A stretch of DNA of 39,728 bases from Ministeria vibrans ATCC 50519 (lineage: Eukaryota > Protista > Filasterea), in contig CALSCP010000716.1 in NCBI GenBank assembly GCA_943704425.1, forward strand, positions 1 through 39,728. The letters run 5' to 3'. Shown here in pieces: positions 124 through 38,513 of the stretch. Position 1 is the first letter of the stretch; the number at the start of each line of letters is the position of its first letter. Below the pieces are notes generated by a model. The model searched no databases. It saw only the letters and a list, made by a program, of their open reading frames with translations, and had not been told where the DNA came from. The translations under genes were made by a program, and so were the position numbers.

Positions 124-177
124 CCCTAACCCTAGCCCTAGCCCTAGCCCTAGCCCTAGCCCTAGCCCTAGCCCTAA
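124..177. repeat. Interstitial telomere-like hexamer array CCCTAA-(CCCTAG)7-CCCTAA
   Basis: Nine hexamer units read directly. The flanking units are canonical CCCTAA (TTAGGG on the minus strand). Confidence 0.9.
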
Positions 178-4200: not shown

Positions 4201-5696
4201 GGTTGGCGAGGTCTGTCTTTGGTAGATTGACGCGTCGCGCAAAAAACCATTCAAGTGTATCACGTAGAGACGTTGCCGACATTGGCACGAGTCGCATGCT
4301 CGTAGCAAGCGAGTGGGATTGATCAAGGGCGTTGCGGCAGGTGACAATGACGAAACGTTCGTATTCTCGTGTCCATTCGCGAAAGAGGCGCGCAAGCTCA
4401 TCGTGGGACTCGGGCTGCCGCAAGACGGCGTGAAGTTCGTCAAAGGCGTCGCAGAGAAACACAGCAGCATGCTCGTCGACACGTGTTTGCACGAGCTCGC
4501 GCACACTCGCGGAGAGTTCGGGACACTCGGCACAAATGTTGCGCACAAACTCATCGATCAGTTGCTGTTCCAGCTCGGCGGGCGTCGTGTTGGTGGTCAG
4601 CATGAGATTACCGAGTTCGACAAAGATGGGGAGAACCTGGTTGTCGTTGTAGTCACGGAGTTTGCGCGCGACGCTCAAGAGTGTCATCGTCTTTCCACTG
4701 CCAGACTCTCCAGAAAGCCATATGAGCGAGTCACTGTCCCTCGTCGTGACCTTCGACGCGAGTTCTTCGACAATGTTTTTGATATCGTGCTCATGACCAC
4801 CTACCATAGATGTGGCAGAAGTCGGCCAGGCATCGATGATGTTGTTGCCAGCAAATTCGCACTGACGGGCGACCTTGCCGAGCATGCTGTTCAGGCCAGT
4901 TTGGAGTTGCTCGCTGGGCGGTCGTGTGCTCGGCAGTGGGTGGCGGCGGTGCTGACCCATGCGAATGCTGCTCCCACGAACGTTACGAGCAGCGTCGGGC
5001 AGCTGAGCCGTCTCAAGCAGTTGGACGAGCACATTTGTGAGTGCATCAATGTCGAGTGGTCGTGCAGCGCCCGCAACAGACATATGAGCACTTTGATTGC
5101 GAAACTGTGAGCGAGCCGTTTTGGCGCTCTGCATGATGAGTGATGGGGTGTTGCGGAAATGCTGAAGAAAGCAGAGCATCACACTTGAGTCGGCGTCGGC
5201 GAATGAGGTGAGCGCAGCTTTCTGGCCAGTGACGAACACACGCAACACCTCGAAGCGATTGCGGCTCCATTGCGACGCATTGGTGTTGTTCGTGTCGATG
5301 GTGTGATTTACATGAGCGTTCTTGATTGCATTATACCACTGCTTGCACGTGTTGCAAGAGGGTGGGCGAGGTGCTGAGGAGAAAAGAAAAAGAAAGAAAA
5401 ATAATATCAACTCCACAGTGTGCCAGAAAAAAGAAAAAAGAAACCCCCGTCCCCGTACGGCCTTTCTTCTTGAGCGTCCCCGACGTGTGCTGTTTTTGAA
5501 CAAAGTGGACTTCCTCACACGTGCAGGGGGCATTGATGATGGCCCTTGTGCGCTCGTGGAAATCTTTTAAAAGATTGTCACAATAATCGACAAGCTCAAG
5601 GCAAGCCGAGTCAATCAAGTCGTTACACTCTTGGCGCGACATGTTGAGATTGTTGTCGTACGAGGTGATTGAGGTTGTACAAACAAGATTGATCAT
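1214..5696 (-). CDS. NACHT/STAND-family NTPase with a C-terminal multi-pass membrane domain (~1465 aa, 2 exons)
   Basis: Walker A SGESGSGKT, LPIFVEL strand, Walker B VFLCDAFDEL, sensor-1 FVIVTCR, winged-helix HRSVCEYLAA and WVEVL. About 9 hydrophobic segments lie in the C-terminal third. A phase-1 intron at 5374-5458 joins ORF 5331-5708 to the 1439-aa ORF. Start is ATG 5696 or 5642. Confidence 0.8.
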
Positions 5697-6915: not shown

Positions 6916-7585
6916 TTACAGTCTAGTCTCTTGATCGGACTCGAGAATGGAAAGCGTTTGTTCGGAGAGTCGTCGTACAGAAACGTCAAGTCTCGCGAGA
7001 CCCGATGGTAACTTGCCCGTGTCCATTATTTCATCCACATCCAATGAGGGTGGCACATCGTTGAGGAATACGTCATGATGCTCCTCGTGTAGATTGTCCA
7101 GGTTGGATACAGCTTCCTCAAGTGAAAACGAGACTCGTGTCGATCCTGCCGTGCGCACCGACGGTTTGCTTGCCGTGTTGGTTGAGCCTGAGCTCATGGT
7201 ACGAGCGCCCGATGACTTGCTCCCCACTTTCTTGTGGTTATGTCGCTTATTGAAACCGCATCCCAACCGTTCAAGCCAGGCAACGTAGACAGTCTTCTTG
7301 CAGCAGAAGACGACGAAGAGCAGTGCTCCTTGTGACGCATTAAACACCACAAAGGGATACCAAAAGCCAAAGAGACCCGACGCCAGTGCCGCAAATCCAA
7401 ATGACCAAGTTAATCCCAAAGTAACGAAGAACGCCACAATGTAGACAAACATTCTTTTCTTGTCCTACGCAAAAACGGTACTATTATTAATACTATTATT
7501 ACTGTAATAATAATAATAATAATTGTTAGTATTATTATTATTATTATTATTATTCTGATTATTATTATTATTATTATTAATTATT

Positions 7586-7665
<80 letters not shown>

Positions 7666-10634
7666 CATAATTATTATTATTATTATTATAATAAAATAAT
7701 ATTATAATAATAATAAAATAATATTATAATAATAAATAATTATTATTACTATTGTTTTAATACTTTTGAAGTGGTCGCCTTGAGACTCGAACGAGATTGT
7801 GCGGCTGTGCGAAGCGATCGGATGGTCAAGACAAAGATGCAAATATTAAGGGTGAGCAGCAGGGCGACGGGAATGACAAAGAATCCAATGAGACCGCCAC
7901 GTGAGTCGAACCAGCAACGCGAGTCGGAACCAAGCTGCAGAGCTCGATTGGAGATGGAATCAACAATGACGGCGACCAGGGCTACGGTCAGGGGCACAAG
8001 CCAGGCAAAAGCAAAGTAGGAGCGGGTGCGACTGACATTGACCATTTGGACGCGCACGAGTAGTTTGTAGAGCTGATGAGAGAAGCAGAGCGTCCAGCAG
8101 AACTGGGCGAGAAGGAAAAAGTAGAGAAAAAAGGCACTGGTGCGACAGGCCGAAGTGTTGCCGGTGCGGTCAAGACCCACCAAGAAGACCAAATTGGTGA
8201 AGAAGATGGCCACACACAGATTCATGATGATGATCATTTGTGGCGTTCGGAGAGCCTTGAGGACAGTATAGGTGAGGAGCAATAGAGCTGCGCCCACCAT
8301 GGACAAGATGCTTCCAACATAAGAGAACACCACCAGTAGCGTCTGGCTTGTATCTGTGACAAAACGAGCGTCGAGGAGCACGGCAAAGTTGGTGAGATGG
8401 GTGCACTTGCACAGGCTCAGGGTGGTGCTGCTCTCGTTGGCGACGAGTGCACAACCGTCGTCGACCCAACTCTCGGTTAAGTGGCTCCACGATACGCACT
8501 GAGTTATGGTGCCGTCGGAAAGCTCCTCGTGGTGTGGCAAGCGGACAAGAACGGTGGCATTTTGTACGAGCTCAACTGACTGTGGCGAGGTTTGGACCCC
8601 AAAAGAGATGACGGCTGAATTGACACGCTGCTCGTTGGGGCTGGTCGAGAAGAAGGCAGAGCGCTCGTAGACAACAAAATGTGCTCGGTAGCAGGTGGAG
8701 CCGTTGAAACCAGGGGCACCGGCTGCAAGGAGGCTTGCACCAAACTCGCTTGGCACCAAAATAGACGTGTCAGATGTGTCCATGTCCGAGCGCGAATAAA
8801 GCCCACCCTTGCTGGCACCGGGTCCCAGCTCCAAGCCCGACTGGACAAATAGAGTCTGGGTGGCTGCCGATGCCGGCGGGTCACCACAGGTGTGAGTGCG
8901 CGACAGCGAATAGGAGAAAGTTTCGACAAGATCGCTCAGCGTGGACGTTGGAATGACGCCTGCTGCGTGCAGCCTAGCGAGGCTCTCGTCGCTCCAAATG
9001 TTCTCCAGTGAGCTCAAAATGAAAGCTTGTACACTGGTGTTGAGAGAAGTCGAAGTGTCCACGTAGTCAATGAGTAGCGACAAGACATCCATGATGGTGG
9101 TCGCGGCGTACGTGCTGTCCTCAACCTCAAGCCAAGCGTTGCTCCGCGTGGCATTGACCAGTGTGGCCCCCAAGTGCTGGGCGGTCGCCTCGCTGACCCT
9201 GGTCGTGGTAGTGTTGCTTATTGTGCTGCTGCTCAAGAGATCTTGAAGGGTTTGAACAAGACACACTGCCGACTGAGCTGGGGCGTTCTCGAGCACGCTG
9301 AGCAACGAAGTGGGAACCCCTGCGAACGTCGTGAGAGTGTGCTCCTGGCATAATTGAGTATTGTCCACAATGGAAATGGCACCGGTCACACCACCGGCAG
9401 ATGTAGTGCTGGCGAGTCGTTCGGCAAGCACATCAATGTTGCGCAGCGCCTGATTTGACGTTATTTTGAGATTGCCTGTGACCGTTTCAAAGAACGCGAA
9501 CGATTCCGGTGCAAGGCTGCGCAGTGCGCTGTTGGCGGCAAAGGTGAGACCTCCAACATTTTTCAAGACTGGTACATGGATCTGGGAGAGTCTGGCGTTG
9601 TCTTGGAACGAGACGGTGCCGAACACTTCCACAAGGCTGAGCATTCGAATGCTCTGCAATTGTGCATTGTCCGCGACCAAAAAGTCCCCATAGATGACAC
9701 TGAGCAGGGGTAGGGAGACGCTGATAAGCACAGGGTCTGTGATGGTGATCATAAGCGAGCCCATGAGGGAAGTACATGAGCGCAGCGACTGTATCTGAGC
9801 GACAGAAGTCAGTGTGATGTACGTGCCGCTGAGGCCGCACGACGTTGATATGGTAGTCTGGCAGAGTTCGCCTGTGGTTCCTGCCGAGCACACACACGCG
9901 TACTCGCCGAGAATGTCGTTGTTGCTGACACATAAACCACGATTAAGACAGGGTTGCGAGACGCACGAGGACTGTGTTGCCGTGTTTATGTTCGTCGAGG
10001 TGTCCGACTGCAACACCAGCTGCGCGCAAGTGGTGCCCGAGAAAAGCGCTGTGCACTCGCAAAAAAAGTCGCTTCCTTGCACACGACACGTACCACTGTT
10101 GACGCACGGGGACGATTCACAAGGATCGGTCGCTTGTGAGCGACTGCAGGGTGCTGTTGAACACTGACACTGCAACGAAATGATGACACAGCTTCCGCCG
10201 CCCGTGAGGTTAAAGGAGCCTCCAAAAGGCACTATGATACCCTGAAGAAGGTCGGGAGGGTGAGTGACATTGCCCGCAGGGTTGTAGTAGAAGGCACATT
10301 CGTTGTTGGCGAAGCTTGTGTCGGGCAAAGTCACAGCGCCACCGGCAATTTCGGGGCTGCCCGTAAATTCCACGGCAACAGTCGAGGCGGCGCCGAAGGA
10401 GCCACCGGCAATGAGAGTCTCGCCTTGTACGTGAAAGTCGTTGTCAATTGGCGTTACAGTGCTCTCGCCAAAGTGGTGTTGCATCTGGCTGTGTGCGAGC
10501 GAATACGGCGACTGCGAGCGAGGTTCTGCTGCTCCAAAGCAGAGCAGTTCAAATTTGATTGTTTTACTTGCGCTTGTCACGAGCAGAAGCGACGTCATAG
10601 CGAGGACTTTGACCAAAGGACTGTGGGCCAACAT
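6916..10634 (-). CDS. Adhesion-class GPCR (signal peptide, unrecognised N-domain, 2 EGF, receptor-L-like repeats, GAIN/GPS, 7TM; ~1139 aa, 2 exons)
   Basis: EGF repeats CESSPCVNSGTC...CECTALFSGTTC and CVSQPCLNRGLC...CVCSAGTTGELC. GPS motif CVSW...WVDDGC...CKCTHL|TNFAVLL. TM3 LAQFCW, ECL2 CW, TM6 LGLTW, TM7 FNASQG. Phase-0 intron at 7465-7763. Confidence 0.92.
7465..7763 (-). repeat. (TAA/TTA)n microsatellite-filled intron of the aGPCR
   Basis: GT...AG ends on the minus strand; the interior is almost entirely AAT/ATT repeats. Confidence 0.85.
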
Positions 10635-11090
10635 GATGGAAATGATGACGTGGTTTCTCACGAATAAAAAAAACTCCTGGGTATTCGTTTCGGAAGATCA
10701 AAATGATTGTTAATATTACAATGAGTCGTCAAGATCTGCTAGATCGCAATACATTCTAACCCCCCTCAAACGCCTCAGCACGGCACGGCACACATCCTGC
10801 GGACCTGCGCTAACTGATGCATAGAGACGACATGGACCATGGTCTCTTGCATCTTTCTCGAATATTCTGAGCTGTTTGTGTTGTCGCTCGGTTGATAATA
10901 ATATACATGCAATTGAAAAATAATATCTTCTTTGAGTTATCCTTCAATCTTCACTAATTCATTTATTCCTACCCCCAGTTGTCAATGAAGAACATTGTAA
11001 GACATAGTTGCTCTCTTATCCATGTGACACGTTCGTCTTGTTGCTCTGCAAAAACACAATTCTTGTCGTGTGTCGCCTCCTGGATATGAA

Positions 11091-12895
11091 ATGGCTTTGA
11101 GAGCGCAACTCACATCCCCCAGAGCCAGTGAGAGCGTATCCATACAACTCACTTGCACAGTCAGAAGAATGAGCACTCGGATGAAACGAAGATGAAACAA
11201 CACTTTTTTTTTTGCTACAATATTTTTTTTTCCTCTCTTTTGTCTAAATCTTCTTTCCCGTTTCGCAGGTTCTCCTCGGTATCGGGCTCTCCATACTTGC
11301 TGTGTGTACAGTGAACATTGTCTCGGCACAGTCCACGGTTGAGGTTGAAAGCTACAGTGGCTGGTATCACAACCTCGCTTCGCCGCAGACCGGAACTGTC
11401 GATAACGTCCTTGAACGTGTCGCACCGTCCGACTACGATGACGGTGTCTACAAACCGTCCGGTAGGTACCGTGGAAACCCTCGCACCATCTCCCAACGCC
11501 TCATGAATGGCACCGCGGGCCTTCCATCCGAACGCAACCGTACAGCCCTTTTGGTGAGATCATTATAAAAAATTTATGAATTGGTAGTAGGATTATTGGA
11601 AAAACATCCTCCCTCTCTCTCTTCTCGTTCCCTCATTTTCTTTCTCTTTCTCTCTCCCTTTAATTTTCCAACGCAGGTGTTCTTTGGACAACTGACTGTG
11701 ATGGAGATTGTCACCGTTCAGTTGCCTTCCTGTCCCACCGAATACTTCAACGTTCGAGTATGGTGTACCTCACGATCAAAAACAACAACACATTATATTG
11801 CAATATTAATGCGTCCTCTATCACACCTTGTTGGAACAGGTCCCTCAATGCGACGCGGAGCTCGATCCGGAGTGCGAGGCCGACGAAGACCATGCCAAAT
11901 GGTTGATCATGCACCGTTCGCGCTACCCCAGTCACACCGGTCAGGGGCCCAACAATCCTCGACAGCAACTCAATTCGCTCACCCCCTGGATCGACGGCGG
12001 TGTCATTTATGGCAACCGGCGAGGTGTCAGCGACGCACTGCGTAGCTTTCGCGGCGGCGAGCTTATCGTGCAAACTATCAACGGCGAAGAATACCCGCCT
12101 TTCAACACACCCGGTCTTCCTGCAGAAAACCCGGCTCCACCCACGCTCAACCGTCTACTCTCCCCGGCGCGCTTCTTTCGTTCGGGAAACGCCGCCCAGA
12201 ACGAAAACCCTATGCTCCTGAGCGTCAACCTTGTTTTCTTTCGAAACCACAATTACCACGCACGTCGTCTCGCGGCCCTCAACCCAACCTGGACGGACGA
12301 GCGCCTCTTCCACCGTGCCCGCCAGTGGGTCATTGCTGAACAACAACGTCTCATTGCCTATGAGTTTGTTCCTGCGTTTGTTGGCGAGGCGTTGCCCGAC
12401 TACCATGGCTATGAACCGGCCGTGTCCCCGGCTATCTCGCAGACCTTTCACGTAGCCGCCATGCGCTTTGGCCACTCACTCGTGCCTCCAGGTGTCTACC
12501 GTCGCTCTGCCACTTGCAACTTTCACACGACCACCAACGTGACCGGCACGCCCGGCAACATTGCCTTCCGCACCTGCAACTCCTTCTTCCTCCCCAACGA
12601 ACCCATTCTTGAATTTGGTCTTAATGACATTCTCATGGGCCTCGCCTCACAAATCGCCGAGCGCGAAGACCGTTTCATCGTCGAAGATCTTCGTGGCTTT
12701 GTCCAGGGTCCTCTCGAGCAGACACGCCGTGATCTTATGGTACAAACACTAATAACACGCGAGAGTGAAGAGGGAGAGAGAGATGAATTCTTGTCAATTT
12801 TCCCAGGTCCTTAACCTTCAACGTGGCCGCGATCACGGCGTACCCGACTACAACACCGTTCGCAAAGGTACATAAAAAAAACAAAAAAATGTAAA

Positions 12896-12928
<33 letters not shown>

Positions 12929-15900
12929 TATTTTATTATTATTATTATTAATTTTATTATCATTATTGTTCATTATGATATCGACTACAGCTCTTATACT
13001 ATTATTTTGATTGTTTTCATTTTCTTATTATAATAATGATCATTATTATTATTATTCTTTTTGCTTCGTACTCTAATAATATTACTATTATTATTATAAC
13101 TCTTATTATTATAATTAGTATACGTTTTATTATTATTAATTATTTTTATTTATTATTGTCATTACTTTTCTTTAATATAGCGTTCGGCCTGAGCGCAAAA
13201 GCAACGTTCGCCGATATTGCACCAAATGGAACAGAGTCGAGCGGGTGGGAGGCGCTTGCGGAAGTATACAACAACACCTTGGGCAACATCGACGTGTGGG
13301 CGGGCGGTCTGGTTGAGTCTGTGGGCGATCCCGGCGAGCTCTTTTCCCATGTCATTCTCGACCAGTTCAACCGCATCCGCAATGCTGATCGCTGGTGGTT
13401 TGAGAACAAGGCCAACGCATTGTTTACCGACGACGAAATTGCCATGATTCACAACACCTCGTTTGCTGATGTGATTCACCGTGTGACCACCATTGGCCAG
13501 GGCGAAATCCAAAAAGACGTCTTCTTCCATCTCGCAGGCGACCCGTGTCCCCAGCCCAAACAGCTCCATCCAGACGACATGGAACACTGCACCGAGGGTC
13601 ACGAACTTGATTTCTACAATGACACAGGTGGTCGTGCGACCACCGGAGCCATTCTGGCGTCCATTGCCTGTTGGCTACTGCTCAATATTGTTGGGATTGT
13701 CCTGGCGATCCACTGGGATCGACCTCGCGTCATGCGCGTACGTCGCTTTGTGTCGCGCTGCCTGACTCGCGCACCCGATAGCAACATTGAGCCAGTGCTA
13801 CGCGTGGCGGGCGTGGAAGCGAAGCTGTCACAAACCCATCGTGGCATGCGCTGCTTTGGAGTACTCGACATGTCGGGGTGCCAGGCAGTGCCGCTGTTCC
13901 TCGTTGCCGTCGACTCTGAATCTGGCGTGAATCTCTTTGATCTAGGCATGCAAGAGTGTGTGCGCACCATGCGCCCTCTTAACTATGTCGATTGTGGCAT
14001 TGTGGCATACCGCTGCGGCGTCGAGTCGAGCGGCGACCCGGCCGGCCTCTTCCTCCACGATCTGACCAGCCACGATCTCTACGTGCTGTTCAACTCGTAC
14101 GAGGACCGTGACGAGTTTGTCGCTGTGCTCGAGGGCATCTACTCCAACGCGGATGCTGGTCAGCTTAAGGTCGCGTCAAATGTGCTGGACCACGCGACAG
14201 CAAGCCGATGCAAGCGACCCACCGAGGAGCGCGAACGCGACATCAAAAAGATCATGATGGTCTCCAAAGACTCGAATTTGCTTACGTTTCTTGCAAACCG
14301 CGAACCCAACACGCCTCTTACCGATCAACTGATTGATCAGCATCTGAAAAACTTTGCTGACTCGACGGGCATCGACTCCATCACGTGGGAGGACCTCGAG
14401 CGTCTTTGCCGTCTGCTCACTCGCCAGGAGTTCTGCAAGGAGTTTGGCCTGCCTCAGAATGGCAGCTACTCGCGCCGCATTTGCGACATGCTGTCGCTCT
14501 CCAATGACCTCAGTCGCATATCCAAGTACTCGCTCATCCGCTTTTTTGCCACCATGGCGTCGCCCGACAAGGAAGAAAAGATGCGCTACATCTTCCGCAT
14601 CTACGACGACGACAACAGCGGTGAGTTGTACCGTCGCGAGCTCGAAGAGATGTTTCTGGCCAATCTCGCCGCCAACCACATCGACTTGCCCACTTCTTCG
14701 GACATCAAGGAGTTCTCCAAATTTCTCTTTTACCACGCGGGTGTCGACGACGACTGCGACTTTATGACGGCAGATCAGTTTGTCACGCTGGCCAATGACT
14801 CGGAGATTGAACGTACAATGCGTCGCGCGACCCTCTCCGCTGCCAAGACCAGACGAGCGCCAACAAACTCGCTGCAGATCCCCCGCGTTGTGTCCAGTGA
14901 CTCTTCAGCCATGGCCACTCTGCCGACGTCACTTATGCCAGCCACCATGCGGCACCATAGCATCTTCCACGAGGAGGACGACCCGCAGGTCGCCGACGAC
15001 GGCCCATCACACGAGTCTGTTGTGGTCAGACCCAACATTCGTGATGGCGACGACAACACCACTGCCACTTCTGCTGCTGCTGCTGCAACTGCTACTGCTG
15101 CCGCTACTGCTGCAAACCTGCGTGTGCGTCGCACAGTGACCATTCGCACAAAGTCACAGATTGTACTGAACGAAAATGGTTTCAGTGACGACGGTGACGG
15201 CGTCCAGGTGCCCGAGCCACACCAGCGCTCTCACTCGCGCGCTAGCAACACATTCAGCGACATGTTCACCAGCAGACGCAACTCGACGTCGCCTCTCAAC
15301 TCAGTCACACCGAGCCCATATCGTTTTTCCGAGTACACCGCACGCCCGTCTCGCAGCTCGTCAATCGCTACCCGCATTCGATCCTCCGTCTCGAAAGGCG
15401 TAGCGTGGTTGCGTGGCGCACTGCACGCAGCACGCGCTAAACGACGCGAGCGTCGCCTTGAAATTTTCTGGATCACCATCTACGTGGCTCTGATCAGCCT
15501 CATCTTCGTCGAGCGCTTCATCTTCTACGGCTATCTGCGCGAAAACCGTGGTCTCCGTCGCATCGCTGGGTTTGGAATTGCAGTCACGCGTGGCTCTGCG
15601 TCGGTCATCATGTTCACACTGGCACTCCTCCTCCTCCCCATGTGTCGCAACACCCTGGCCGTCGCCCGCACCACGCGCCTGCGCTTCGTCGTTCCCTTTG
15701 ACCGTGTTGTCGAATTTCACACTATTGTCGGTTGGACCTTTGTCATTGCTGCCCTTGTTCACAGTAAGCACATTAATGCCAACTACGAATAACAATAACA
15801 ATAATTATTATTATTAATTATAATAATAATAATTATTATTATTAATAATAATTTTATTTTATTATAATTATTATTATTAATTATTTTTTTATCATTGCTT

Positions 15901-16117
15901 TTAGCTCTTGGGCATTTGGTGAATTTTTATTCCATCCAGACACAACCAAGCGAAGATTTGTCCTGTCTGTTTCCGGCAGTGTTCCACTACTCATCTGAAG
16001 TCACCACCTACCAGTATTGGCTCTTTGGCACCATGACGGGCGTCACCGGTTTCCTTCTCGTCATTTCTGTTGTATCCTTTGTTGCCTTTCTCATTCCGTA
16101 CGAAAGAATCCCGCGAA

Positions 16118-16187
<70 letters not shown>

Positions 16188-16201
16188 CAAAAAAATATAA
16201 C

Positions 16202-16241
<40 letters not shown>

Positions 16242-16260
16242 TTAATATTAATATTAATAT

Positions 16261-16291
<31 letters not shown>

Positions 16292-17370
16292 TGTTTTAAC
16301 TCCTTCTTTGTCATGTCTCTAGGGCAATGCGTCGACAGTCATATGCTCTATTCTACTTCGTGCACACGACGATTGCGCCACTGATCTTTTTTCTGCTGTT
16401 CCTGCACGGATCGCTGCAGATTGTGCAACCGCCCTACTTCTGGTACTTTATTCTGCCCACCATGCTGCTGTATGTGTTTGATCGTCTGTGGACACTTGGC
16501 GTGCGCACACGACAGCTGCGTGTGGTACGTGCGGAAAAACACCCAAACAATGTGCTCGCGCTGTACCTCGAGCGGCCAGCCACCTTTGAGTTCAGTGCGG
16601 GTGCGTACATCCGTCTGGCGACCGAGAGCAATGGAACAGGTCGTCGCGAGTACCACCCCTTCACCCTGTCGTCCGCACCGCACGAAGACCACCTGTCGCT
16701 GCACATTCGTCAGGTGGGACGTTGGACACGCCAACTCTCATCGGGCTACTGCCAGGCGTCGCTCGACGAGAGTCCCATTTGGCCCAAGGAGTTCCCTCCC
16801 GCCTACATTGAAGGGCCCTTTGGCGGCTCCTCTCAAGACTGGTTTAAGTACGAGACAACCGTGCTAATTGGAGCGGGCATTGGCGTGACGCCCTATTCGT
16901 CGATTCTCAAGGACATCGTGCACAAAGCACACCGTGCTGCCGTACGCAAGGTGTACTTTGTGTGGGTGTGTCGTTCGCTCCAGCAGTTTGAGTGGTTTCT
17001 CGATGTGCTGCGCACGGTGGGCAGTGGCTCAGAGGCGTGTACCGTCGAGAGCCACATTTTCATTACGGGGGCCAAGCAGAGCAGTGACATCCGCACATTG
17101 CTGTTGTACGCCGCCGAACGCCTCTGCCAGGTTGCCAAGCGGCCGTCGCTGCTCACCGGCACCCACGCGTACACCAACTTTGGACGACCCAACTTCACCG
17201 AGTTCCTCGGCAGTGTGCTCTCACGCCACCAATACGACTCGAACTTATCCGTCTTCAGCACAGGGCCCAAGTCGCTCGTGCTCAACGTTGATGACTGTGT
17301 TCACCAGATCAACGCAAAGACCCACACTGCCGCGCGTCTCGTTCACTACCCCGAGGTTTTCAATTATTAG
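11091..17370 (+). CDS. DUOX: Dual oxidase (peroxidase-homology domain, TM, EF-hand region, ferric reductase TM domain, FAD- and NADPH-binding domains; ~1740 aa, ~8 exons)
   Basis: Phase-consistent exons 11269-11553, 11677-11757, 11840-12739, 12807-12867, 13181-15763, 15905-16097 and 16323-17370. The first exon (11091-11159) is tentative. Motifs: SGWYHNL, YDDGVY, RNRTALLVFFGQ, TGQGPNNPRQQLNSLTPWIDG, MRFGH, QRGRDHG, DRWWFEN, EF-hand DDDNSGELYRRE, TRGSA, haem His pairs, HPFTLSSAP, EGPFG, GAGIGVTPY, FGRPNF. Confidence 0.96.
16098..16322 (+). repeat. (AAT)n/(ATT)n-filled DUOX intron; similar tracts at 12868-13180 and 15764-15904
   Basis: Microsatellite tracts lie between GT and AG splice sites. 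Confidence 0.85.
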
Positions 17371-17489
17371 AGATCAAAAAAAAAATTATAATAATAATAA
17401 TAATAAATTTTAAGAAGAATACAGCAAGAATAACTAATAATCTTTTTTATTTCTGATTCATATCCCTCAAATCGGTTTTGGAGTCTGAT

Positions 17490-17685
17490 CGCTCCTGCTT
17501 GATCCTAAAATATTCTGCTCGTGCGGGACTGCGGGCAGGATTGCAGGATAAATCCTGGCAGGATCTCCGGACAGGTTTTTTGGAAGTTTTTTGCAGGATA
17601 AGTGCAGGATCAATTCCCGGATCCTTCTCGGATCCTATAATTCCTATTCAATCAATCTTTGCTCGCCTGTTTGCTCGCCTGACGG
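17490..17685. repeat. GCAGGAT motif cluster and a short tandem duplication in the DUOX-DUOXA spacer
   Basis: GCAGGAT at about 17535, 17543, 17558, 17593 and 17604. TTTGCTCGCCTG occurs twice at about 17658-17681. Confidence 0.55.
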
Positions 17686-17843
17686 TCTGAGTTGCCTCTT
17701 TGCATTTTATTTGCAGCCTCTAACTCCTCTAAGCGTCGAGTTAGGTTTGGTTGCACTTGCTTTGTTTGTTCAAGCAAGTTGTCTGTGTAGCAGAGCATAT
17801 TTGGAGCATATTTCAGAGCATTTTTGTGACAACCCAAACTAAA

Positions 17844-19997
17844 ATGGCATCCAGCTTTTGGGAGTCGTACTTGCATGGCACAAGTTGGTACATGGAACCA
17901 TGTAGCCCTCTGTCTGTGTTCGACCGTGGCGCGCCTCATCCAACGGCGTACTGTGAAAACCGGACCGCTTCGCCGTTTGTATGCAGAAAAAAAAAGCAGA
18001 ACAACGAACGGAAGATGAAGAGAGAGAGAGAGACGCGTGCGGACTGATGTCTGATTAGTGAATGAGGGGAAAGAGTGTGTAGAGGGTGTGGATGGGGGGG
18101 GGTGTGGAAGGCTGTTTCTTGTGCTCATCCGTGTGCTTTAGGACTATGACCTGGCCGGCATCACCGTGGCCTTTGTTGTTGTGTTTGCTGCAATGATTCT
18201 GGCCATTGCTTCGTGTGTGACAAAACGCCGACAGCTGGTGGTCTACCTTGCCATTGTTCTATATTTGGTCTTGGGCCTTGCAATTCTCAGTAAGGGTCCA
18301 AAATTAATATTAATTTTCGAAACGAACCAACCCTCGCGTTCCCTCCATGTCTCACTGCAGCTCCCAACTTTGGATACTCGTGGCATGTGGCCAAGGTACG
18401 CACGTCGACCGAGTATACGGCGTCGAATAAGACGGTTGATGTCGACATTGGCGTGTGGGTTGGCTTGCGGGGCTTCAATGTGACAATGAAGGGAGTCCCG
18501 GTGCAGCAACACAACGAGACCATTGACTATAACGAACGCTTTCTCTTTGGCGACAGTGCCGGAGTTGGTGTTGGATATGGCCCACAGGCTGGTGAGATCC
18601 GTCAAGAGACTCGACAAGCACACAATCGAGGAGTTCCCTATCCCATTCTGTACACATATACCCATGAAAAATTACAATAATAATAATATCGTCATCTTGT
18701 TTCATTCTCATGCTGCGCTTCCTGTTTTCCTCGCTATTTTTTCCCCCCCCCCCCCCCACCAACTGATCGATTTTTTTCTTTGTATTAATTGTCTAGGTAC
18801 ATTGCAGAGTACTTTCACTTTGACGTTCTGTTCATTCGGTGGGGCCGCTACTATCGTCTGGGTGGTTACTACGCCCAAATTCTTTTGTGGGCGGCGCTCC
18901 CCTTTTGGGCACTGGGAGGTTTTGTGGCGTTTGTGTCGCTCTCGACGGCCGCATGGTTCATTCTCGCGGCTGGTTCGCTCATGGTGTGTGCCACTGTCGA
19001 GTGGTGGGTCGAGGTGTTCAAGCCGATGCCTGATTTTAACATTCCCTTTCCGGGCGGCACGCTCTCGTTTGCCTTTGGCTGGTCGTTTCTGTTTTGCTTT
19101 GTGATGGGCATAATCACTGTCGTGGTCTGTTCCACAATGCTCCTCCTCCAGGCCATGGACCGCCTGCCCTTTACCGTCGGAAAATTCAAAAACAATGCGT
19201 CGCGGACCTTCAAGAAACTCGACGCGACAGCGCGCCCAGCGTATCACGACGTCCAGGAGTCGAATCGTCTGCGGCGTGAGGAGGAGAAAGTCAGACAGTC
19301 GGCCAAGGAGGGTACCAACGAGAACAGCCGCGAGTTTGTCTCGACTGCGGACACACGCAAACTGCCGTTTCTCCGCACTCTCACACGGCGTACGCGGCCG
19401 TCAGAGAATCGCTTCAACAAGACGGGGAGTCAGGAGCTCATCGAGTATCAGCCCCAACACAGCATTCGCCGCAACCCAACCAATAAATCCCGAGCCCAAT
19501 TTATTGTTCCGACCCCAGACTTTCCGCCGCCCCATGCCTACGATATTCTCGACGAAAGCGCCGCCACACGCGACTCTCCCATTCACTCGCCACAGCCGTC
19601 GCCCTACACTCAGAAAAGAAACGGATTTCCCAGCCTCCGCAACAATGAGGAGCAGCTCGCCACAATTGAGATGCAGGATCTTAACAAGCAAACCTCGTTT
19701 GCCGCCAAGGCTATATGGCGCTCCGACGGCTATACCGACTCTCCAGACGACGGTGTGGGCCGCTCGCTTGCAGTCAATCGGGCACTGGGTGAGCTGACCG
19801 CACACAATTCAGTCGCCGAGACGGCGGCTCCCCTTGCCCATGGCGACGGAGAGGCATATGCAATCCCTACTGAGGAGACAGTGGTGGATGGGATGCCACG
19901 CCCTACGACGAGTCCGCTGAGTCACAACACTGATCTCTCCCTCGACCTCTCCGATGATCCAGGTGCCGAAGAGAATGTCAATGTTTCAGCAGTATAG
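17844..19997 (+). CDS. DUOXA: Dual oxidase maturation factor (DUOXA/NIP family; 590 aa, 4 exons)
   Basis: Phase-consistent exons 17844-17978, 18142-18289, 18361-18649 and 18797-19997. Family motifs NFGYSW, DIGVWVGLRGFNVTMKGVPVQQHNETIDYNERF, RGVPYPILYIAEYF, WGRYYRLGGYY and FGWSF. Confidence 0.95.
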
Positions 19998-20331
19998 ACA
20001 AGAACTTTTTCTATTACAATAAAAAAATTATTATTATTATTACTATTAAATTTATTATTATTATTATAATAATATTTTATTATCAATTTGTATTAATATT
20101 AAGACGACCAATGTTTCAGTTTCCCTTAAGTACTGACACATTGGGAATTCTATAGCAATAACGCAGTTCTTAACAAGAAGCGACGGCAAATGGTTGAAAA
20201 CAAAAAGCCGGGCCAAACACAGTAACTTGGAAGTTGGAAGAGTCGTAGGGAAGAAAGCAATTTCATTGGTTTTCAGGTGTATCTTAACCCTTCCCATGCA
20301 TTATACACATTTGTGGTAACAATTTTTTAAT

Positions 20332-21322
20332 TCACTTCTTGGCGTGCGCCTTGTGCTTCTTTGCAGTGCGCTTCTTCGCACTGACAACATTTGCCTTGGA
20401 CGAGCCAGTCATTTCCACTGATGAGACTACCTTTGGTGCCTTCCTGGCGCCCTTTTTCTTCTTCTGCGACCCACTCGCGCCCTCTGCGTCACTTTCGCCG
20501 TGCTGCTCGTCATTGATCGTAAGGTCCTGCACCACAGACAACATACCGTTGCTCAATAATTATAGGTCACGCCGTGCAACGTACCATCTCGTCAAAGACA
20601 CCCTCGAGCACTTGGTGGACGCCGTCCCCTGCATTCTCATACTGGAAGTACCTATTTACCACACTGCTCACTACTCTCAACGTGTGAGTTGCAGTCTCTT
20701 CAGTGGCTCATCGCCGTACCTCTGATCTCGCCTTTGCGCTCCTTGAGCACCAGATACGAGTTGGTGTCGACCAGTGCGCCCTTCAAAAGCAATCCTATGC
20801 TCACCAGTCGTCAATGAAAACCATCCAAACCCTCCCCAGCTGCAACTCCAAACCTTTGAGATCCAGCGTCACTCCTGTCGGATTGTGTGCATCAACGAGA
20901 ACGCGCCCAATGCAGCCAATGTCGCCAGTCAAATTCATCTAGGTGCCAAACCAGTGTCATGTCGCGCGCTCACAGAGTATCGCACTCACTTCGCCATCGC
21001 TGGTTTCAACGAGAAATGACAACGTCTTGGACGGAGCACTTCCAGTGAGCTTCAATACGCCACCAGGAAGCTACACAACACAAAGGTCAACAACGCACTG
21101 TCAACCAAATCGAAACGCGTTTCTGGTGCGCTCCACCACACACTCCGCACCTTGTCCTCCCCCGCCGCGGCATCCTCGGTGCCACTGGCATCCCCCTCTC
21201 GGCCATCGTCGCCGGCGTCGTCTTCTGCTTTTCTCTTTGGTGTGCGTTTCGCTGGCAACTTGGAAACACTCTTCTTAGGCGATGAAGCGCCCTTTCTTCT
21301 TGCCGGCCTGTCCCCTTCGTTT
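20332..21322 (-). CDS. BIN4-like protein (topoisomerase VI accessory subunit family), multi-exon, 5' end lost in the nnn gap
   Basis: Hand-spliced core FLVETSDGEMNLTGDIGCIGRVLVDAHNPTGVTLDLKG...KGEIRVSSVVNRYFQYE...VLEGVFDE. It resembles plant BIN4 as I recall it (LVECEGDSIDLSGDMGAVGRVVV...LDLKG). Lys-rich tail and charged low-complexity N-terminal part. Confidence 0.62.
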
Positions 21323-21325
21323 NNN
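21323..21325. other. Assembly gap (3 N, true size must be larger)
   Basis: Two divergent coding sequences both run into it without start codons. Confidence 0.8.
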
Positions 21326-22168
21326 CGTTACTTGAGGACATCGTGGCAACAGTTCTGCGCCGATGGACTGCGCTGAACACAGCCGTCGCACACGTACCAA
21401 TGCGCCTTCGTCTGCTGCGCTGATTCCCGGTGTTGCTGTTGGGCGTCTGTAGGGATGGGGCGGAGCGGAGAGCCAGGAGAAGTTCTACTGGCTTCACGCC
21501 GTCATTGAAGAGTTTCTGCAGAAAGGTTGGCAGTGGCGCCACGCGTGCTGCTTCCTACTCACCCCCTTGCGCTGTGTAGACGAGGTGTTTGCGGACGAGC
21601 TCTCCGATTACATTGACGACATTGTCACAGAGGAGTTCCACATGATGTGCGAGGACAACAGCTGCGAGCAGGTGCGCTGCGGTGCATGTGAAACAGTGTT
21701 GTGACTCACTCGCTCCTCTCCGTCCCAAGGTTGCCCGTGTCCTCACCGCCAAACATGCGCTTTTGAAGCAAGGCAAGACGGACGAAATCAAAGAGTGGCT
21801 TGCCAAGGCTCAGGGACCTGCCAATGTGGCCGCTTCTGCCACCGGAAAGGTGATGAAATCGAGAGGGGGGGAGGGAGTGTCGGGGTCACGAATGACTGCT
21901 GACAGTGGGGATTGTTGCAGGATGACGAAGACGACGAGGACGACGAGTGTGATGCGGATGACGGCGGTGTTGATGAGGCTGACGAGGCGGCGTCTTCGCT
22001 TGCGAACGTGTCGGTTGCGGACAAGGGAAAAGGTACGCAAAGGGAAAGCACAAGTTCAGCACAAGGTGTAGCTTATATGTCGTATATGTAGAAGACGAGA
22101 CAGCTTCAGTGGTGGACGACGACGGGTGGACGACGGTGACGAAAAAGGGGAAGGGAAAGCGGAGATGA
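21326..22168 (+). CDS. TSR2: Pre-rRNA-processing protein TSR2 (WGG family), multi-exon, start in the gap
   Basis: Spliced translation RRWTALNTAVAH|GWGGAESQEKFYWL...DELSDYIDDIVTEEFHMMCEDNSCEQ|VARVL, then an acidic tract, then DDDGWTTVTKKGKGKRR*. Confidence 0.85.
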
Positions 22169-22482
22169 GCTGTGTTGCCGTGTTGTGGTGTATAATACGC
22201 ATTGGGGGGGGGGAAGGAGTCGGGATTGGAACGAAGATTGAACCTTCTTTTTGATTAATTCTAATAGTCCTGAGAATGTTTAGAACTTAACCTCATTCAC
22301 TATTAGCTGGTCACTGGGTACACTTTATGATGCTCGATTAGCTGCCGTTCAAACAAATGAAGAAGACCAAACAAATGAAAATCGAAAATTCGATATCAGC
22401 ATTCTATTCAAACTAAAAGAGGTCAAATTTCAATTTTAAAAAGTAAATTTTCATCTGTTTACTTTGTGTGACTTGTTGTACC

Positions 22483-24872: not shown

Positions 24873-24909
<37 letters not shown>

Positions 24910-26568
24910 TATTATTTTATTATTGTTATTATTCAATTATTAATAATTATTATTAGTATTATTCTATTAATTTTATTATTCTATTATTTTATTATTCTAT
25001 TATTTTATTATTCTATTATTTTATTATTGTTATTATTCAATAATTATTTATTAATATTCTATTAATTTTATTATTCTATTATTTTATTATTGTTATTATT
25101 ATTTTTTTCTCATTATTATTATTCTTATTATTATTCTTATTCTGATTATTATTCTTATTATTATTATTCTTATTATTATTCTTATTGTGATTATTATTCT
25201 TATTATTATTATTTTTATAATTATTATTATTATTATTATACGTACTTGGGCCAGCTCTGCGGCACTTTGGTAGTGCCCAAGAGCCGCATTCATCTCAGAC
25301 AGAGCGTCGCACGCAGCACCAACATCAATGTCAGTGGGGCAGAGCACACGCACACGCAACGCAAGTGCCTCCTCCACAAGCACCAAGGTAGCCGGAGAAG
25401 GGGCACTCGCACGAGCCACTCGAAGACGCTCTGCAGCCTCGACAAGCAGCCCACGCCGCTCGTCACACTCTGCGCGCGTCAGCTTATGCCCACACAGAGT
25501 GCACAGACTCAGCTCAGACAAGTCACAGTCGAAATCGACATCCTCGGCAGTGTGCTCGCCCTCAGGACACACCACACAGCGAATTTGTCGCAGACCCACA
25601 CCACCCGCGCACGCGTCACACTCACACACAAAATGATATTGTTGTTGCAAATGCTCTCGCCGTGCACGACGTCCCATGCGGCCCACCTGGGGTCCGTACG
25701 AGTGGCGCAGCACCGTCCCCGCACGAAGCTCCTCGGACGCGCGCACCTCGATGCGCGTTCCCTCAAAGCGCAGTGTCACATTCGGTCGACAGCCATGATT
25801 CAAAAACGAAGCAAGAGAGTACACACCCAACCCTACTTGCTCCTGAACTATAGCCGACGTGCCTGCCAGCGACCCAGACGCTTCAGCAGACACCGCAACA
25901 TTGTGACGCGTCACGGCAAATCCGTTTGCATACACGCGCCCAAGCTGATACACCAAATCCACAATGCACTCGTCCCGCAAGTCATGTCCGCACACCAATG
26001 AAAGTTCAGTAGCATCACGCACAACATTGCGAAACGTCTGATCGCTCAAATTCCCAATGTGCGCCTCAAGCGTCGCAATGACTTGGCATCCAGAATGAAA
26101 TCCGCCGTGGTCCAAGCAGACGCCGGCCGTCCGTGCTGCATCGGACGACAGCACATCCTGCTTCGCCACGGGCAACACAGCTGAAGCACCAAGTGCCAAG
26201 CTGCATGCGGGAGTCTCGGGTGTCGTTGTCGCTCTCGCCTGGGCCTGCGCGCACTCTTGATGGAGAGCCAGCGCAAGACGCATCTCGCGAGTGTATCGAC
26301 ACGCCGTCGTCTTCGTTGGCACGCACGCGACTGGATGTTCCGCCAGAAGCAAGGCACCTGCAGGTACATCACTATGCACGCACAAATGCCGTCCTTCACG
26401 GTCGCCCATTGCGCAAACGAGTGCTTCACAAATCGTCAACTCACACAAAGGTGCTTTTCCAAACCCTTCAAAGTTTGGCGGCGTCATCGCAGGCGCCCTC
26501 AGCTTTCTCTTGCACTCGCTCAAACGTGTCATAATTTTCAAAACGACATCATCTCTTTGATCCGACAT
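24639..26568 (-). CDS. SMYD-type (SMYD4-like) SET-domain lysine methyltransferase with a C-terminal TPR-like region (~510 aa, 2 exons)
   Basis: EGRHL...AGALLLAEHP, GLGVYSLASFLNHGCRPN, LRHSYGP and post-SET QYHFVCECDAC. AT-microsatellite intron at 24849-25245. Confidence 0.85.
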
Positions 26569-38061: not shown

Positions 38062-38412
38062 GGCAACAGACCAAACTGGAGAGAGGCAGAAGAAAAGTCC
38101 TGGTGTTGATTCTTGAGACTTGAAGGTTCCGCGACTGCAAAGATGTGAGAATAATTGTATTATTGTAATATAACTAATATTGTATAAACTATAATGTTTA
38201 CAGTTTAATGTATGTCTTTAATTTTATTTGGCGACAATTCAGATCGCAGAATGCACACCCAATTTTTTAGAATCGCAAAATGCACACTTATTATTCTCTA
38301 TTCTCTATTCAAATAATCAAATTATTTTTATTGTTATTATTATTCTTATTAGTATTATAATAATATTATAATTATTATTATTGTTGTTGTTTTTTGTGTT
38401 GCGTATGTCTTT

Positions 38413-38513
<101 letters not shown>

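What the first reader, a model, noticed from the sequence alone, without database searches (positions are those of the whole stretch)
11091..19997. Complete animal-type DUOX and its maturation factor DUOXA side by side in an apparently non-animal genome
Seen: a full peroxidase-domain DUOX is followed about 470 bp later, on the same strand, by a clear DUOXA. Known: the DUOX/DUOXA pair is characterised in animals, where vertebrate copies are linked head-to-head. Inference: the compact genes, tiny introns and BIN4-like neighbour point to a protist. If so, the two-component H2O2 generator and its genomic linkage predate animals or were transferred together, here in a head-to-tail arrangement.
Basis: partly seen in the sequence, partly recalled or inferred. 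Interest (0 to 1): 0.88.

Follow-up and report, generated by a model that had tools for sequence, protein, structure and literature searches.

The report
DUOX and DUOXA in a filasterean
A single-celled marine relative of animals, most probably Ministeria vibrans, carries an expressed dual oxidase gene and its maturation-factor gene side by side, but two papers had already reported that this linked pair is older than animals.

Summary
Window 11091-17370 (+) encodes an 8-exon, 1731-aa DUOX with a peroxidase-homology domain, EF-hand region and NOX core. After a 473-bp gap, 17844-19997 (+) encodes a 4-exon, 590-aa DUOXA. All introns are GT-AG. RNA contigs show all three DUOXA introns and one DUOX intron exactly as modelled.

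The organism is not an animal. Its 55.9-kb mitochondrial contig uses TGA=Trp, encodes rps12 and rpl2, and matches published figures for the filasterean Ministeria vibrans.

The genome holds three DUOX and three DUOXA genes: a head-to-head pair on contig C307, this head-to-tail pair, and an unlinked set. The three DUOX form one clade, separated from all 25 animal DUOX sampled. That fits vertical descent with lineage-specific duplication.

The main inference is already published. The linked pair has been reported in the choanoflagellate S. rosetta (PMC10282587, 2023) and in non-metazoan opisthokonts (PMC11721785, 2024).

New here:
- the occurrence in a filasterean;
- the threefold expansion;
- a derived tandem arrangement;
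- unusual NOX-core features in the window's copy.

Verdict: a real, expressed new member of a known kind, of moderate interest.

The parts
11091..17370 (+). DUOX gene, ATG to stop: 8 exons (11091-11135, 11269-11553, 11677-11757, 11840-12739, 12807-12867, 13181-15763, 15905-16097, 16323-17370), 1731 aa
   Evidence: The model has seven GT-AG introns and a single terminal stop. It was guided by the paralogue on C307. Intron 16098-16322 is seen in an RNA contig, and RNA contigs end or begin at 15763 and 15905. Exons 1-5 rest on sequence and homology only.
11347..13524 (+). Peroxidase-homology domain, spread over exons 2-6
   Evidence: Pfam An_peroxidase matches in four exon pieces. The best solved relative of exon 4 is human DUOX1 7d3e_A at E 3.4e-59, ahead of peroxinectin and lactoperoxidase. 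The proximal His is kept; the distal His and distal Arg are absent.
14572..14697 (+). EF-hand region: one canonical calcium loop, and a degenerate first loop just upstream
   Evidence: Pfam EF-hand_7 and EF-hand_6; alignment with animal DUOX; weak alignment to the DUOX1 EF-hand region.
15454..16518 (+). Six-helix ferric-reductase (haem) membrane domain, crossing introns 6 and 7
   Evidence: Aligns to DUOX1 residues 1042-1144 and from residue 1198 on. All four haem histidines are present, but there is one extra residue between the two in helix 5.
16519..17301 (+). FAD- and NADPH-binding dehydrogenase domain
   Evidence: Pfam FAD_binding_8 and NAD_binding_6. DUOX1 6wxr_A scores 263 bits against 155 for NOX2 and 111 for NOX5. 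HPFT and GIGVTP are kept; CGP reads TGP; the C-terminus is not ENF.
17371..17843 (.). 473-bp spacer between the DUOX stop and the DUOXA ATG; it holds the DUOX 3' end and the DUOXA 5' end
   Evidence: RNA contigs of DUOX stop at about 17306-17340. DUOXA contigs begin at 17669-17720. No RNA contig bridges the gap, whereas the DNA contig spans 16302-18657.
17844..19997 (+). DUOXA gene, ATG to stop: 4 exons (17844-17978, 18142-18289, 18361-18649, 18797-19997), 590 aa, with a tail of about 270 aa after the last membrane helix
   Evidence: Model. All three introns are seen as GT..AG joints in RNA contigs of runs X7, X8 and X15, in one transcript contig covering 17669-20011. Pfam DuoxA scores 76 and 67 bits. 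Exon 3 matches DUOXA1 chains 7d3e_B and 6wxr_B at E 2.3e-13.
10635..11090 (.). Divergent spacer of about 456 bp between the DUOX ATG and the first in-frame ATG of the adhesion-GPCR gene on the minus strand
   Evidence: ORF 7749-10661 (-) carries 7tm_2, GPS and EGF domains. The GPCR start is read from the ORF translation and was not checked with RNA.

Best explanation
The window is contig C716 of a 29.7-Mb genome that is most probably the marine filasterean Ministeria vibrans. It carries an expressed DUOX gene and, 473 bp downstream on the same strand, an expressed DUOXA gene.

This is one of three DUOX/DUOXA sets in the genome. The set on contig C307 is head-to-head, with the two ATGs 544 bp apart, as in animals and S. 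rosetta. The third set is unlinked (DUOX on C945, DUOXA on C1443).

The window pair and the C307 pair are each other's closest relatives for both genes. The likeliest history is therefore that an ancestral head-to-head pair was duplicated as a unit inside the filasterean lineage. In the window copy the DUOX gene was then inverted. That left it tail-to-head with DUOXA and head-to-head with an adhesion GPCR.

Inferred mechanism, by homology with the solved human and mouse DUOX1-DUOXA1 complexes:
1. The five-helix DUOXA binds DUOX in the ER and is needed for its exit to the cell surface, where the two stay together.
2. Calcium binding to the EF-hand region releases electron flow from cytosolic NADPH through FAD and two haems to extracellular oxygen.
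3. H2O2 is released beneath the peroxidase-homology domain.

Shown here: gene structure, domain content, transcription and splicing, paralogy, and placement outside animals. Inferred only: the physical pairing, calcium control and H2O2 output.
For: - Domains: Pfam, exon by exon.
- Gene models: open reading frames with only GT-AG introns.
- Expression: spliced RNA contigs in three runs, unspliced in a DNA run, with separate DUOX and DUOXA contigs.
- Best solved relatives: DUOX1 (203.6 and 263 bits, above every other peroxidase or NOX) and DUOXA1.
- Gene census: three DUOX and three DUOXA loci; C307 geometry.
- DUOX tree of 28 rows and 1481 columns: the three copies form one clade (SH-aLRT 99), C716 and C307 are sisters (100), and all 25 animal DUOX lie on the other side (99).
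- DUOXA tree: C716 and C307 are sisters (100).
- Motifs: four haem His, HPFT and GIGVTP are kept.
- Organism: contig C1523 is 55,949 bp, 25% GC, uses TGA=Trp, and carries rps12 and rpl2. Its atp6 is 247 aa and its atp8 206 aa. Published values for Ministeria vibrans are 55.9 kbp, UGA=Trp, 247 aa and 206 aa (PMC7027106).
- Habitat: the stretch also occurs in seawater and algae metagenomes.
Against: - No biochemical evidence exists for this protein.
- The window's DUOX and its C307 sister are the derived copies. They have one extra residue between the two helix-5 haem histidines, TGP in place of CGP, a C-terminus unlike the ENF found in all 10 animal DUOX aligned, and only one canonical EF-hand. 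The C945 copy is canonical at each of these points except the first EF-hand loop, which is degenerate in all three copies. Activity and regulation could therefore differ.
- The DUOX tree is unrooted, made with the quick method, and has no NOX outgroup. It also lacks choanoflagellate sequences.
- The DUOXA tree is unresolved apart from the C716+C307 pair, so co-duplication of the third set is not shown.
- The organism's name rests on mitochondrial figures from a paper's table, not on a sequence comparison.
- The inversion is an inference; no breakpoint signature was found.
Confidence: 0.85

Rival explanations
1. The pair came from an animal by horizontal transfer, or the contig is animal contamination in the assembly.
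For: All named close relatives of both proteins are animal proteins: Branchiostoma, tunicates, insects and sponges for DUOX, and a bivalve, sponges and a hemichordate for DUOXA. No unicellular holozoan appeared among the names I could look up. A preprint whose data set includes Capsaspora reports DUOX only in Metazoa.
Against: - The three copies form their own clade outside all 25 animal DUOX and nest in none.
- They lie on four contigs.
- The DUOX genes on C716 and C307 both have introns filled with A+T-rich repeats.
- DNA runs labelled with the coded organism A hold 87-97% of the stretch's words.
- Spliced transcripts of the pair occur in three runs of two coded organisms.
- S. rosetta is reported to have the pair too.
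- A very old transfer from a stem animal cannot be excluded by an unrooted tree.
Confidence: 0.05
2. The window's DUOX is a diverged paralogue that no longer works as a calcium-activated H2O2 generator. It may have altered cofactor geometry, another electron acceptor, or a scaffold role, while the canonical C945 copy does the classical job.
For: C716 and C307 share an extra residue (with a proline) between the helix-5 haem histidines, TGP for CGP, non-ENF C-termini and a lost distal Arg. C945 keeps the animal state at all of these. The branch leading to C716+C307 is long, at 1.16 changes per column.
Against: All four haem histidines, HPFT and GIGVTP are intact. The frame is open over 1731 codons. 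RNA contigs with DUOX intron 7 removed show that it is transcribed. It keeps a closely linked, co-diverged DUOXA. Both derived copies have been kept, which argues for selection.
Confidence: 0.15
3. The neighbouring DUOXA does not serve the neighbouring DUOX. The linkage is a leftover, and partners are swapped among the three sets.
For: The shared promoter of the ancestral arrangement is lost here. RNA contigs of the two genes are separate and have very different contig depths (contig depth is a poor measure of expression).
Against: DUOX and DUOXA of C716 and C307 are sister pairs in both trees. That is the pattern expected if each DUOXA co-evolved with its neighbour. In mammals the cognate pairs work best together (my own knowledge of Morand et al. 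2009, which is cited in PMC11721785).
Confidence: 0.1

Closest known systems
Human and mouse DUOX1-DUOXA1 complex (PDB 7d3e/7d3f, 6wxr)
   Same: The domain order is the same: peroxidase-homology domain, an extra membrane helix, an EF-hand region, a six-helix haem domain, and an FAD/NADPH domain. It is the best solved match for every conserved exon. The DUOXA extracellular loop, including the conserved N-E-T-I-x-Y-N-E stretch, aligns to DUOXA1.
   Different: - About 180 residues longer, because of a Ser/Thr/Arg-rich insertion after the EF-hand region.
- Only one canonical EF-hand.
- Proximal His kept, where mammals have lost it.
- One extra residue in helix 5, TGP for CGP, and no ENF end.
- DUOXA carries a tail of about 270 aa.
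- The genes are tail-to-head, not head-to-head.
Head-to-head DUOX/DUOXA pairs of sponges and of the choanoflagellate Salpingoeca rosetta (PMC10282587; PMC11721785)
   Same: A linked DUOX plus DUOXA outside or at the base of animals. The same genome's C307 pair has exactly this divergent arrangement.
   Different: The window pair is tandem on one strand. The organism is a filasterean, one branch further from animals. There are three copies of each gene.
Invertebrate and sponge DUOX (for example Oscarella pearsei P0044, Branchiostoma P0031)
   Same: 33% identity over 98% of the C307 query for the sponge protein, and 44-48% over the NOX part for chordate and insect proteins. The C945 copy shares the invertebrate-type motifs in the peroxidase domain.
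   Different: The window copy departs from these motifs in the distal haem pocket and in the NOX core.
NOX5 (EF-hand NADPH oxidase without a peroxidase domain or maturation factor)
   Same: A calcium-regulated NOX core.
   Different: Scores much lower than DUOX1 (111 against 263 bits). It has no peroxidase-homology domain and needs no DUOXA.

Membership tests
DUOX (dual oxidase) | N-terminal extracellular peroxidase-homology domain on the same polypeptide as the NOX core | tested here: met
   An_peroxidase covers profile positions 2-530 across exons 2-6, and one open spliced frame continues into the NOX core. The best solved match is DUOX1.
DUOX (dual oxidase) | Cytosolic EF-hand pair between the extra membrane helix and the haem domain | tested here: inconclusive
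   One canonical loop plus one degenerate loop. The Pfam EF-hand_7 score of 23.5 is below its cut-off of 30. Calcium binding was not tested.
DUOX (dual oxidase) | Six-helix ferric-reductase domain with two pairs of haem-ligating histidines | tested here: met
   All four His align with those of animal DUOX. The helix-5 pair is one residue further apart in C716 and C307.
DUOX (dual oxidase) | FAD (HPFT) and NADPH (GIGVTP, CGP, terminal aromatic ENF) motifs | tested here: inconclusive
   HPFT and GIGVTP are present. CGP reads TGP, and the C-terminus ends in a Tyr-containing variant instead of ENF. Pfam FAD_binding_8 and NAD_binding_6 score above their cut-offs.
DUOX (dual oxidase) | Closer to DUOX than to other NOX subfamilies | tested here: met
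   DUOX1 scores 263 bits against 155 for NOX2 and 111 for NOX5 over the dehydrogenase exon. The top 120 database hits are DUOX-architecture proteins by their Pfam content, and all that carry a name are DUOX or NAD(P)H oxidase (H2O2-forming). No tree rooted with a NOX outgroup was made.
DUOX (dual oxidase) | Calcium-stimulated H2O2 production that depends on DUOXA | not testable with these tools
   Needs expression and an assay.
DUOXA (dual oxidase maturation factor, PF10204) | Match to the family profile above the curated cut-off | tested here: met
   76 and 67 bits against a cut-off of 23.3. 86.8 and 67.3 bits in the genome scan.
DUOXA (dual oxidase maturation factor, PF10204) | Five membrane helices with a large glycosylated loop between helices 2 and 3 | tested here: met
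   Five hydrophobic stretches and three N-x-S/T sites in the loop, read by eye from the spliced model. The loop aligns to DUOXA1 residues 71-132. No topology predictor was run.
DUOXA (dual oxidase maturation factor, PF10204) | Physical complex with DUOX and requirement for its ER exit | not tested
Conserved DUOX/DUOXA head-to-head gene unit | Divergent transcription from a short shared spacer | tested here: not met
   In the window both genes are on the + strand, 473 bp apart tail-to-head. The feature is met by the paralogous pair on C307, whose ATGs are 544 bp apart on opposite strands.

The most novel reading that the evidence does not exclude
The filasterean lineage did more than inherit the pair. 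It built a new variant module. In this reading, the duplicated C716 and C307 DUOX have a reshaped haem and NADPH site and work differently from animal DUOX, for example with a different product, redox partner or regulation. The window copy, now sharing a divergent promoter with an adhesion GPCR and followed by its own DUOXA, would be a receptor-coupled oxidant generator used on bacterial prey. A spliced antisense transcript over exon 6 would add a layer of control.
Probability: 0.1. Interest if true: 0.6.

Novelty: new member of a known kind. Interest (0 to 1): 0.35.

Why it matters
If the organism is Ministeria, the DUOX plus DUOXA two-part oxidase and its physical linkage date back at least to the common ancestor of filastereans, choanoflagellates and animals. 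That is one node deeper than the published S. rosetta case.

It also implies a loss in Capsaspora, if the report that DUOX is found only in Metazoa in a data set including Capsaspora holds.

One genome with a canonical set, a head-to-head derived set and a tandem derived set is a natural experiment. It can show how far DUOX-DUOXA pairing and co-regulation depend on gene arrangement. It also offers a free-living bacterivore in which to ask what DUOX did before there were epithelia.

It does not change the current picture of NOX evolution. It refines that picture.

Tried and rejected
- DUOXA exon 4 against the word-indexed protein collection, restricted to residues 1-130, gave no hit. With 138 candidates this says nothing. 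The full HMMER search with a profile of exon 3 then found 319 relatives.
- The protein atlas gave no usable hit for DUOXA exon 3.
- DUOXA exon 4 gave no hit against solved structures.
- An AU test of whether the three DUOXA copies can form one clade was still unfinished after 860 s and was dropped.
- A search for inverted repeats flanking the DUOX gene, as a trace of inversion, returned only matches between the ATT/AAT repeats inside introns.
- The (CCCTAG)n run at 124-176 is not at the contig end, so I do not call it a telomere.
- I could not name the 18S sequence (contig C1833) because no reference set is at hand. The organism was placed by its mitochondrial contig instead.
- The species behind 'non-metazoan opisthokonts' in PMC11721785 could not be read, because its supplement is not held.
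- Complex prediction, structure prediction and whole-protein database searches with the joined (spliced) models were left out. All searches were made exon by exon by reference. Joined models were used only inside scripts, for alignment and trees.
Domain coordinates in this report are therefore computed from Pfam hit positions.
Full report
**What is in the window**

Scanning the open frames of 11.1-20.0 kb against Pfam gives the following on the + strand:
- four pieces of the animal haem peroxidase domain;
- an EF-hand;
- FAD_binding_8 and NAD_binding_6;
- two pieces of DuoxA (76 and 67 bits, cut-off 23.3).

The frames are broken by short A+T-rich stretches, largely ATT/AAT repeats, which are introns.

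Guided by a paralogue with fewer introns, I built two models:
- An 8-exon DUOX model, 11091-17370. All seven introns are GT-AG (67-313 nt). It has one terminal stop and encodes 1731 aa.
- A 4-exon DUOXA model, 17844-19997. Its introns are 163, 71 and 147 nt. It encodes 590 aa.

The gap from the DUOX stop to the DUOXA ATG is 473 bp.

**Expression**

I laid contigs of four public runs on 14100-20050.
- Three runs that behave as RNA (X7, X8, X15) carry one contig from about 17669-17720 to 20011 (the X15 contig ends earlier). All three DUOXA introns are removed at exactly the modelled GT..AG sites.
- One run shows DUOX intron 7 removed (16097 joined to 16323).
- DUOX contigs end at 15763 and begin at 15905, which are the modelled borders of intron 6.
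- The DNA run X3 is collinear with the genome across 16302-18657.
- No RNA contig bridges 17340-17669, so nothing suggests a joint transcript.
They rest on sequence and homology.

**Which organism**

The genome has 29.7 Mb in 2860 contigs, and the window is the whole of contig C716. The stretch also occurs in seawater and algae metagenomes.

Contig C1523 has these properties:
- It is 55,949 bp with 25% G+C.
- It carries 25 tRNA genes, including one that reads UGA, and it needs TGA=Trp to give long frames.
- It has a full-length bacterial-type SSU rRNA.
- It encodes rps12 (82 bits) and rpl2 (57.5 bits).

In the comparison table of PMC7027106, the one animal listed (Oscarella) has no mitochondrial ribosomal-protein genes, while all the listed unicellular relatives have them. 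I also hold it as established knowledge that animal mitochondrial genomes lack these genes. This is therefore not an animal.

The same table gives 55.9 kbp, UGA=Trp, 24 tRNAs, rps12, rpl2 and rpl14 for Ministeria vibrans, with atp6 of 247 aa and an unusually long atp8 of 206 aa. The contig's atp6 and atp8 frames are 247 and 206 aa. I therefore take the genome to be Ministeria vibrans, a marine filasterean, or a very close relative, with about 85% confidence. This is a match of figures, not a sequence comparison.

**The family within this genome**

Genome-wide scans find three DUOX loci (C716, C307, C945) and three DUOXA loci (C716, C307, C1443).
- On C307 the DUOX runs on the minus strand from 18385 to 12417 and the DUOXA on the plus strand from 18930 to 22299. 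This is the classical head-to-head unit, with the ATGs 544 bp apart.
- The C945 DUOX and the C1443 DUOXA each lie well inside long contigs and have no partner nearby.
- The window DUOX is 52% identical to the C307 copy over the columns kept in the tree. In a tblastn comparison it is 33-48% identical to C945.
- The window DUOXA is 55-62% identical to C307's and about 31% identical to C1443's.

**Relatives elsewhere**

- Named relatives of the DUOX are all animal DUOX. Chordate and insect proteins are 44-48% identical over the NOX part. An Oscarella sponge protein is 33% identical over 98% of the query.
- A profile of DUOXA exon 3 finds 319 proteins in the 1.84-billion library.
- Of the 20 hits I looked up, the named ones come from a bivalve, the sponges Oscarella and Sycon, a hemichordate, arthropods and the red alga Compsopogon (an MMETSP transcriptome). 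The rest are unnamed contigs, most about 1.1-2 kb.
- In a tree of 28 DUOX (1481 columns, quick method), the three Ministeria copies form one clade (SH-aLRT 99). C716 and C307 are sisters (100), and all 25 animal sequences lie on the other side (99).
- The DUOXA tree resolves only the C716+C307 pair (100).

This fits descent from a gene present before animals, followed by duplication inside the filasterean line. It gives no support to transfer from any sampled animal group. The tree is unrooted and lacks choanoflagellates.

**How it probably works**

Every conserved exon has DUOX1 or DUOXA1 of the solved complexes as its best solved relative:
- 203.6 bits for the peroxidase exon, against 134.9 for the next peroxidase;
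- 263 bits for the dehydrogenase exon, against 155 for NOX2;
- E 2.3e-13 for the DUOXA loop.

By homology, DUOXA should bind DUOX in the ER, allow its exit and stay with it at the surface. Calcium at the EF-hand region should then switch on electron flow from NADPH through FAD and two haems to oxygen, releasing H2O2 outside the cell. None of this is shown here.

The alignment adds a caution: the window copy and its C307 sister are the derived ones. They keep the four haem histidines, HPFT, GIGVTP and the proximal histidine of the peroxidase domain. But they differ in these ways:
- one extra residue, with a proline, between the two helix-5 histidines;
- TGP in place of CGP;
- C-termini unlike the ENF found in all 10 animal DUOX aligned;
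- no distal Arg;
- one canonical EF-hand only.

No copy has a distal His; the invertebrate and sponge DUOX in the alignment lack it too. The C945 copy is canonical at the other four points. All three copies have a degenerate first EF-hand loop.

**The arrangement**

Head-to-head is the state reported for S. rosetta, sponges and vertebrates, and it is present on C307. The C716 and C307 sets are sisters for both genes. The simplest history is therefore duplication of the whole unit, then inversion of the DUOX gene in the window copy. This also placed the DUOX ATG about 456 bp from the start of an adhesion-GPCR gene on the other strand. I found no breakpoint signature, so the inversion remains an inference.

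**What is already known**

- As of 2017, DUOX was said to be absent from cnidarians and choanoflagellates (PMC5372347).
- A 2022 preprint whose data set includes Capsaspora still reports DUOX only in Metazoa.
- PMC11721785 (2024) reports head-to-head pairs in sponges and non-metazoan opisthokonts, and describes co-evolution of the two families.
- No paper in the library links DUOX with Ministeria, filastereans or Holozoa.

The central inference of the finding is thus published. The filasterean occurrence, the three sets, the tandem variant and the derived NOX core appear to be undescribed.

**Limits**

- Searches were made exon by exon by reference. Joined models were used only inside scripts.
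- Whole-protein searches, folding and complex prediction with joined chains were left out.
- The scan had already noted the C307 head-to-head pair and several residue-level points on other readings of this genome. I checked those I reuse.

**Verdict**

The pair is real and expressed, and it sits in a non-animal. It is a new member of a known kind, with some lineage-specific twists, and is of moderate interest.

Noticed in passing
window 14139-14321: RNA contigs of runs X7 and X8 skip these 183 nt inside DUOX exon 6. The skipped piece begins CT and ends AC on the + strand, so on the minus strand it is a clean GTAAGA...AG intron. That suggests a spliced antisense transcript over the DUOX linker region, or a strain-specific in-frame deletion. 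The DNA run X3 contains the 183 nt.
   Followed up: partly
G000 contig C1523 (loci L017-L022): A mitochondrial contig of 55,949 bp with 25% GC, TGA=Trp, 25 tRNA genes (tRNA-Asp near both ends), rps12, rpl2 and several very long frames of 780-2050 codons. Its size and its atp6 and atp8 lengths equal the published values for Ministeria vibrans.
   Followed up: partly
G000 C307:12417-22299 (loci L009, L012): A second DUOX/DUOXA pair, head-to-head with the ATGs 544 bp apart. Its DUOX has only about two introns, against seven in the window copy. A 10-N gap lies in the shared spacer.
   Followed up: yes
G000 C945:129900-136000 and C1443:92900-94700 (loci L010, L013, L011, L014): A third DUOX, canonical in the haem-site spacing, CGP and ENF end, and a third DUOXA. 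They lie on different contigs and are unlinked. The intron between the last two DUOXA exons sits three codons away from its position in the window gene.
   Followed up: partly
proteins P0206, P0188, P0190, P0221, P0187, P0200, P0269: DUOXA-like proteins from the red alga Compsopogon caeruleus (MMETSP transcriptome) and from unnamed contigs, most 1.1-2 kb. They fall near the C1443 DUOXA in a poorly resolved tree. They could be DUOXA outside opisthokonts, or contaminants.
   Followed up: no
window 124-176: A (CCCTAG)n run flanked by CCCTAA units, about 120 nt from the start of the contig. It is a telomere-like repeat variant and may be subtelomeric.
   Followed up: no
window 1214-5533 (-), 7749-10661 (-), 26960-28069 (-), 29835-37667 (-), 38581-39582 (-): Neighbouring genes with animal-like domains: a NACHT NTPase of 1439 codons; an adhesion GPCR with EGF, receptor-L, GPS and 7tm_2 domains; a matrixin-like metalloprotease; a 2610-codon single-frame IPT/TIG plus RhoGAP protein; and a LARGE-type glycosyltransferase.
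   Followed up: no
window 12868-13180, 15764-15904, 16098-16322 and other introns or spacers (7482-7748, 24874-25239, 38321-38512): Introns and spacers are filled with ATT/AAT/TAT trinucleotide repeats, while exons have 50-60% G+C. This makes exon borders easy to see, and assemblies break there.
   Followed up: no
G000 C1613:54215-56539 (locus L023): Another NOX-like gene. It has a 775-codon open frame that ends in ENF and carries an insertion of several hundred residues, including further hydrophobic stretches, inside the dehydrogenase domain.
   Followed up: no
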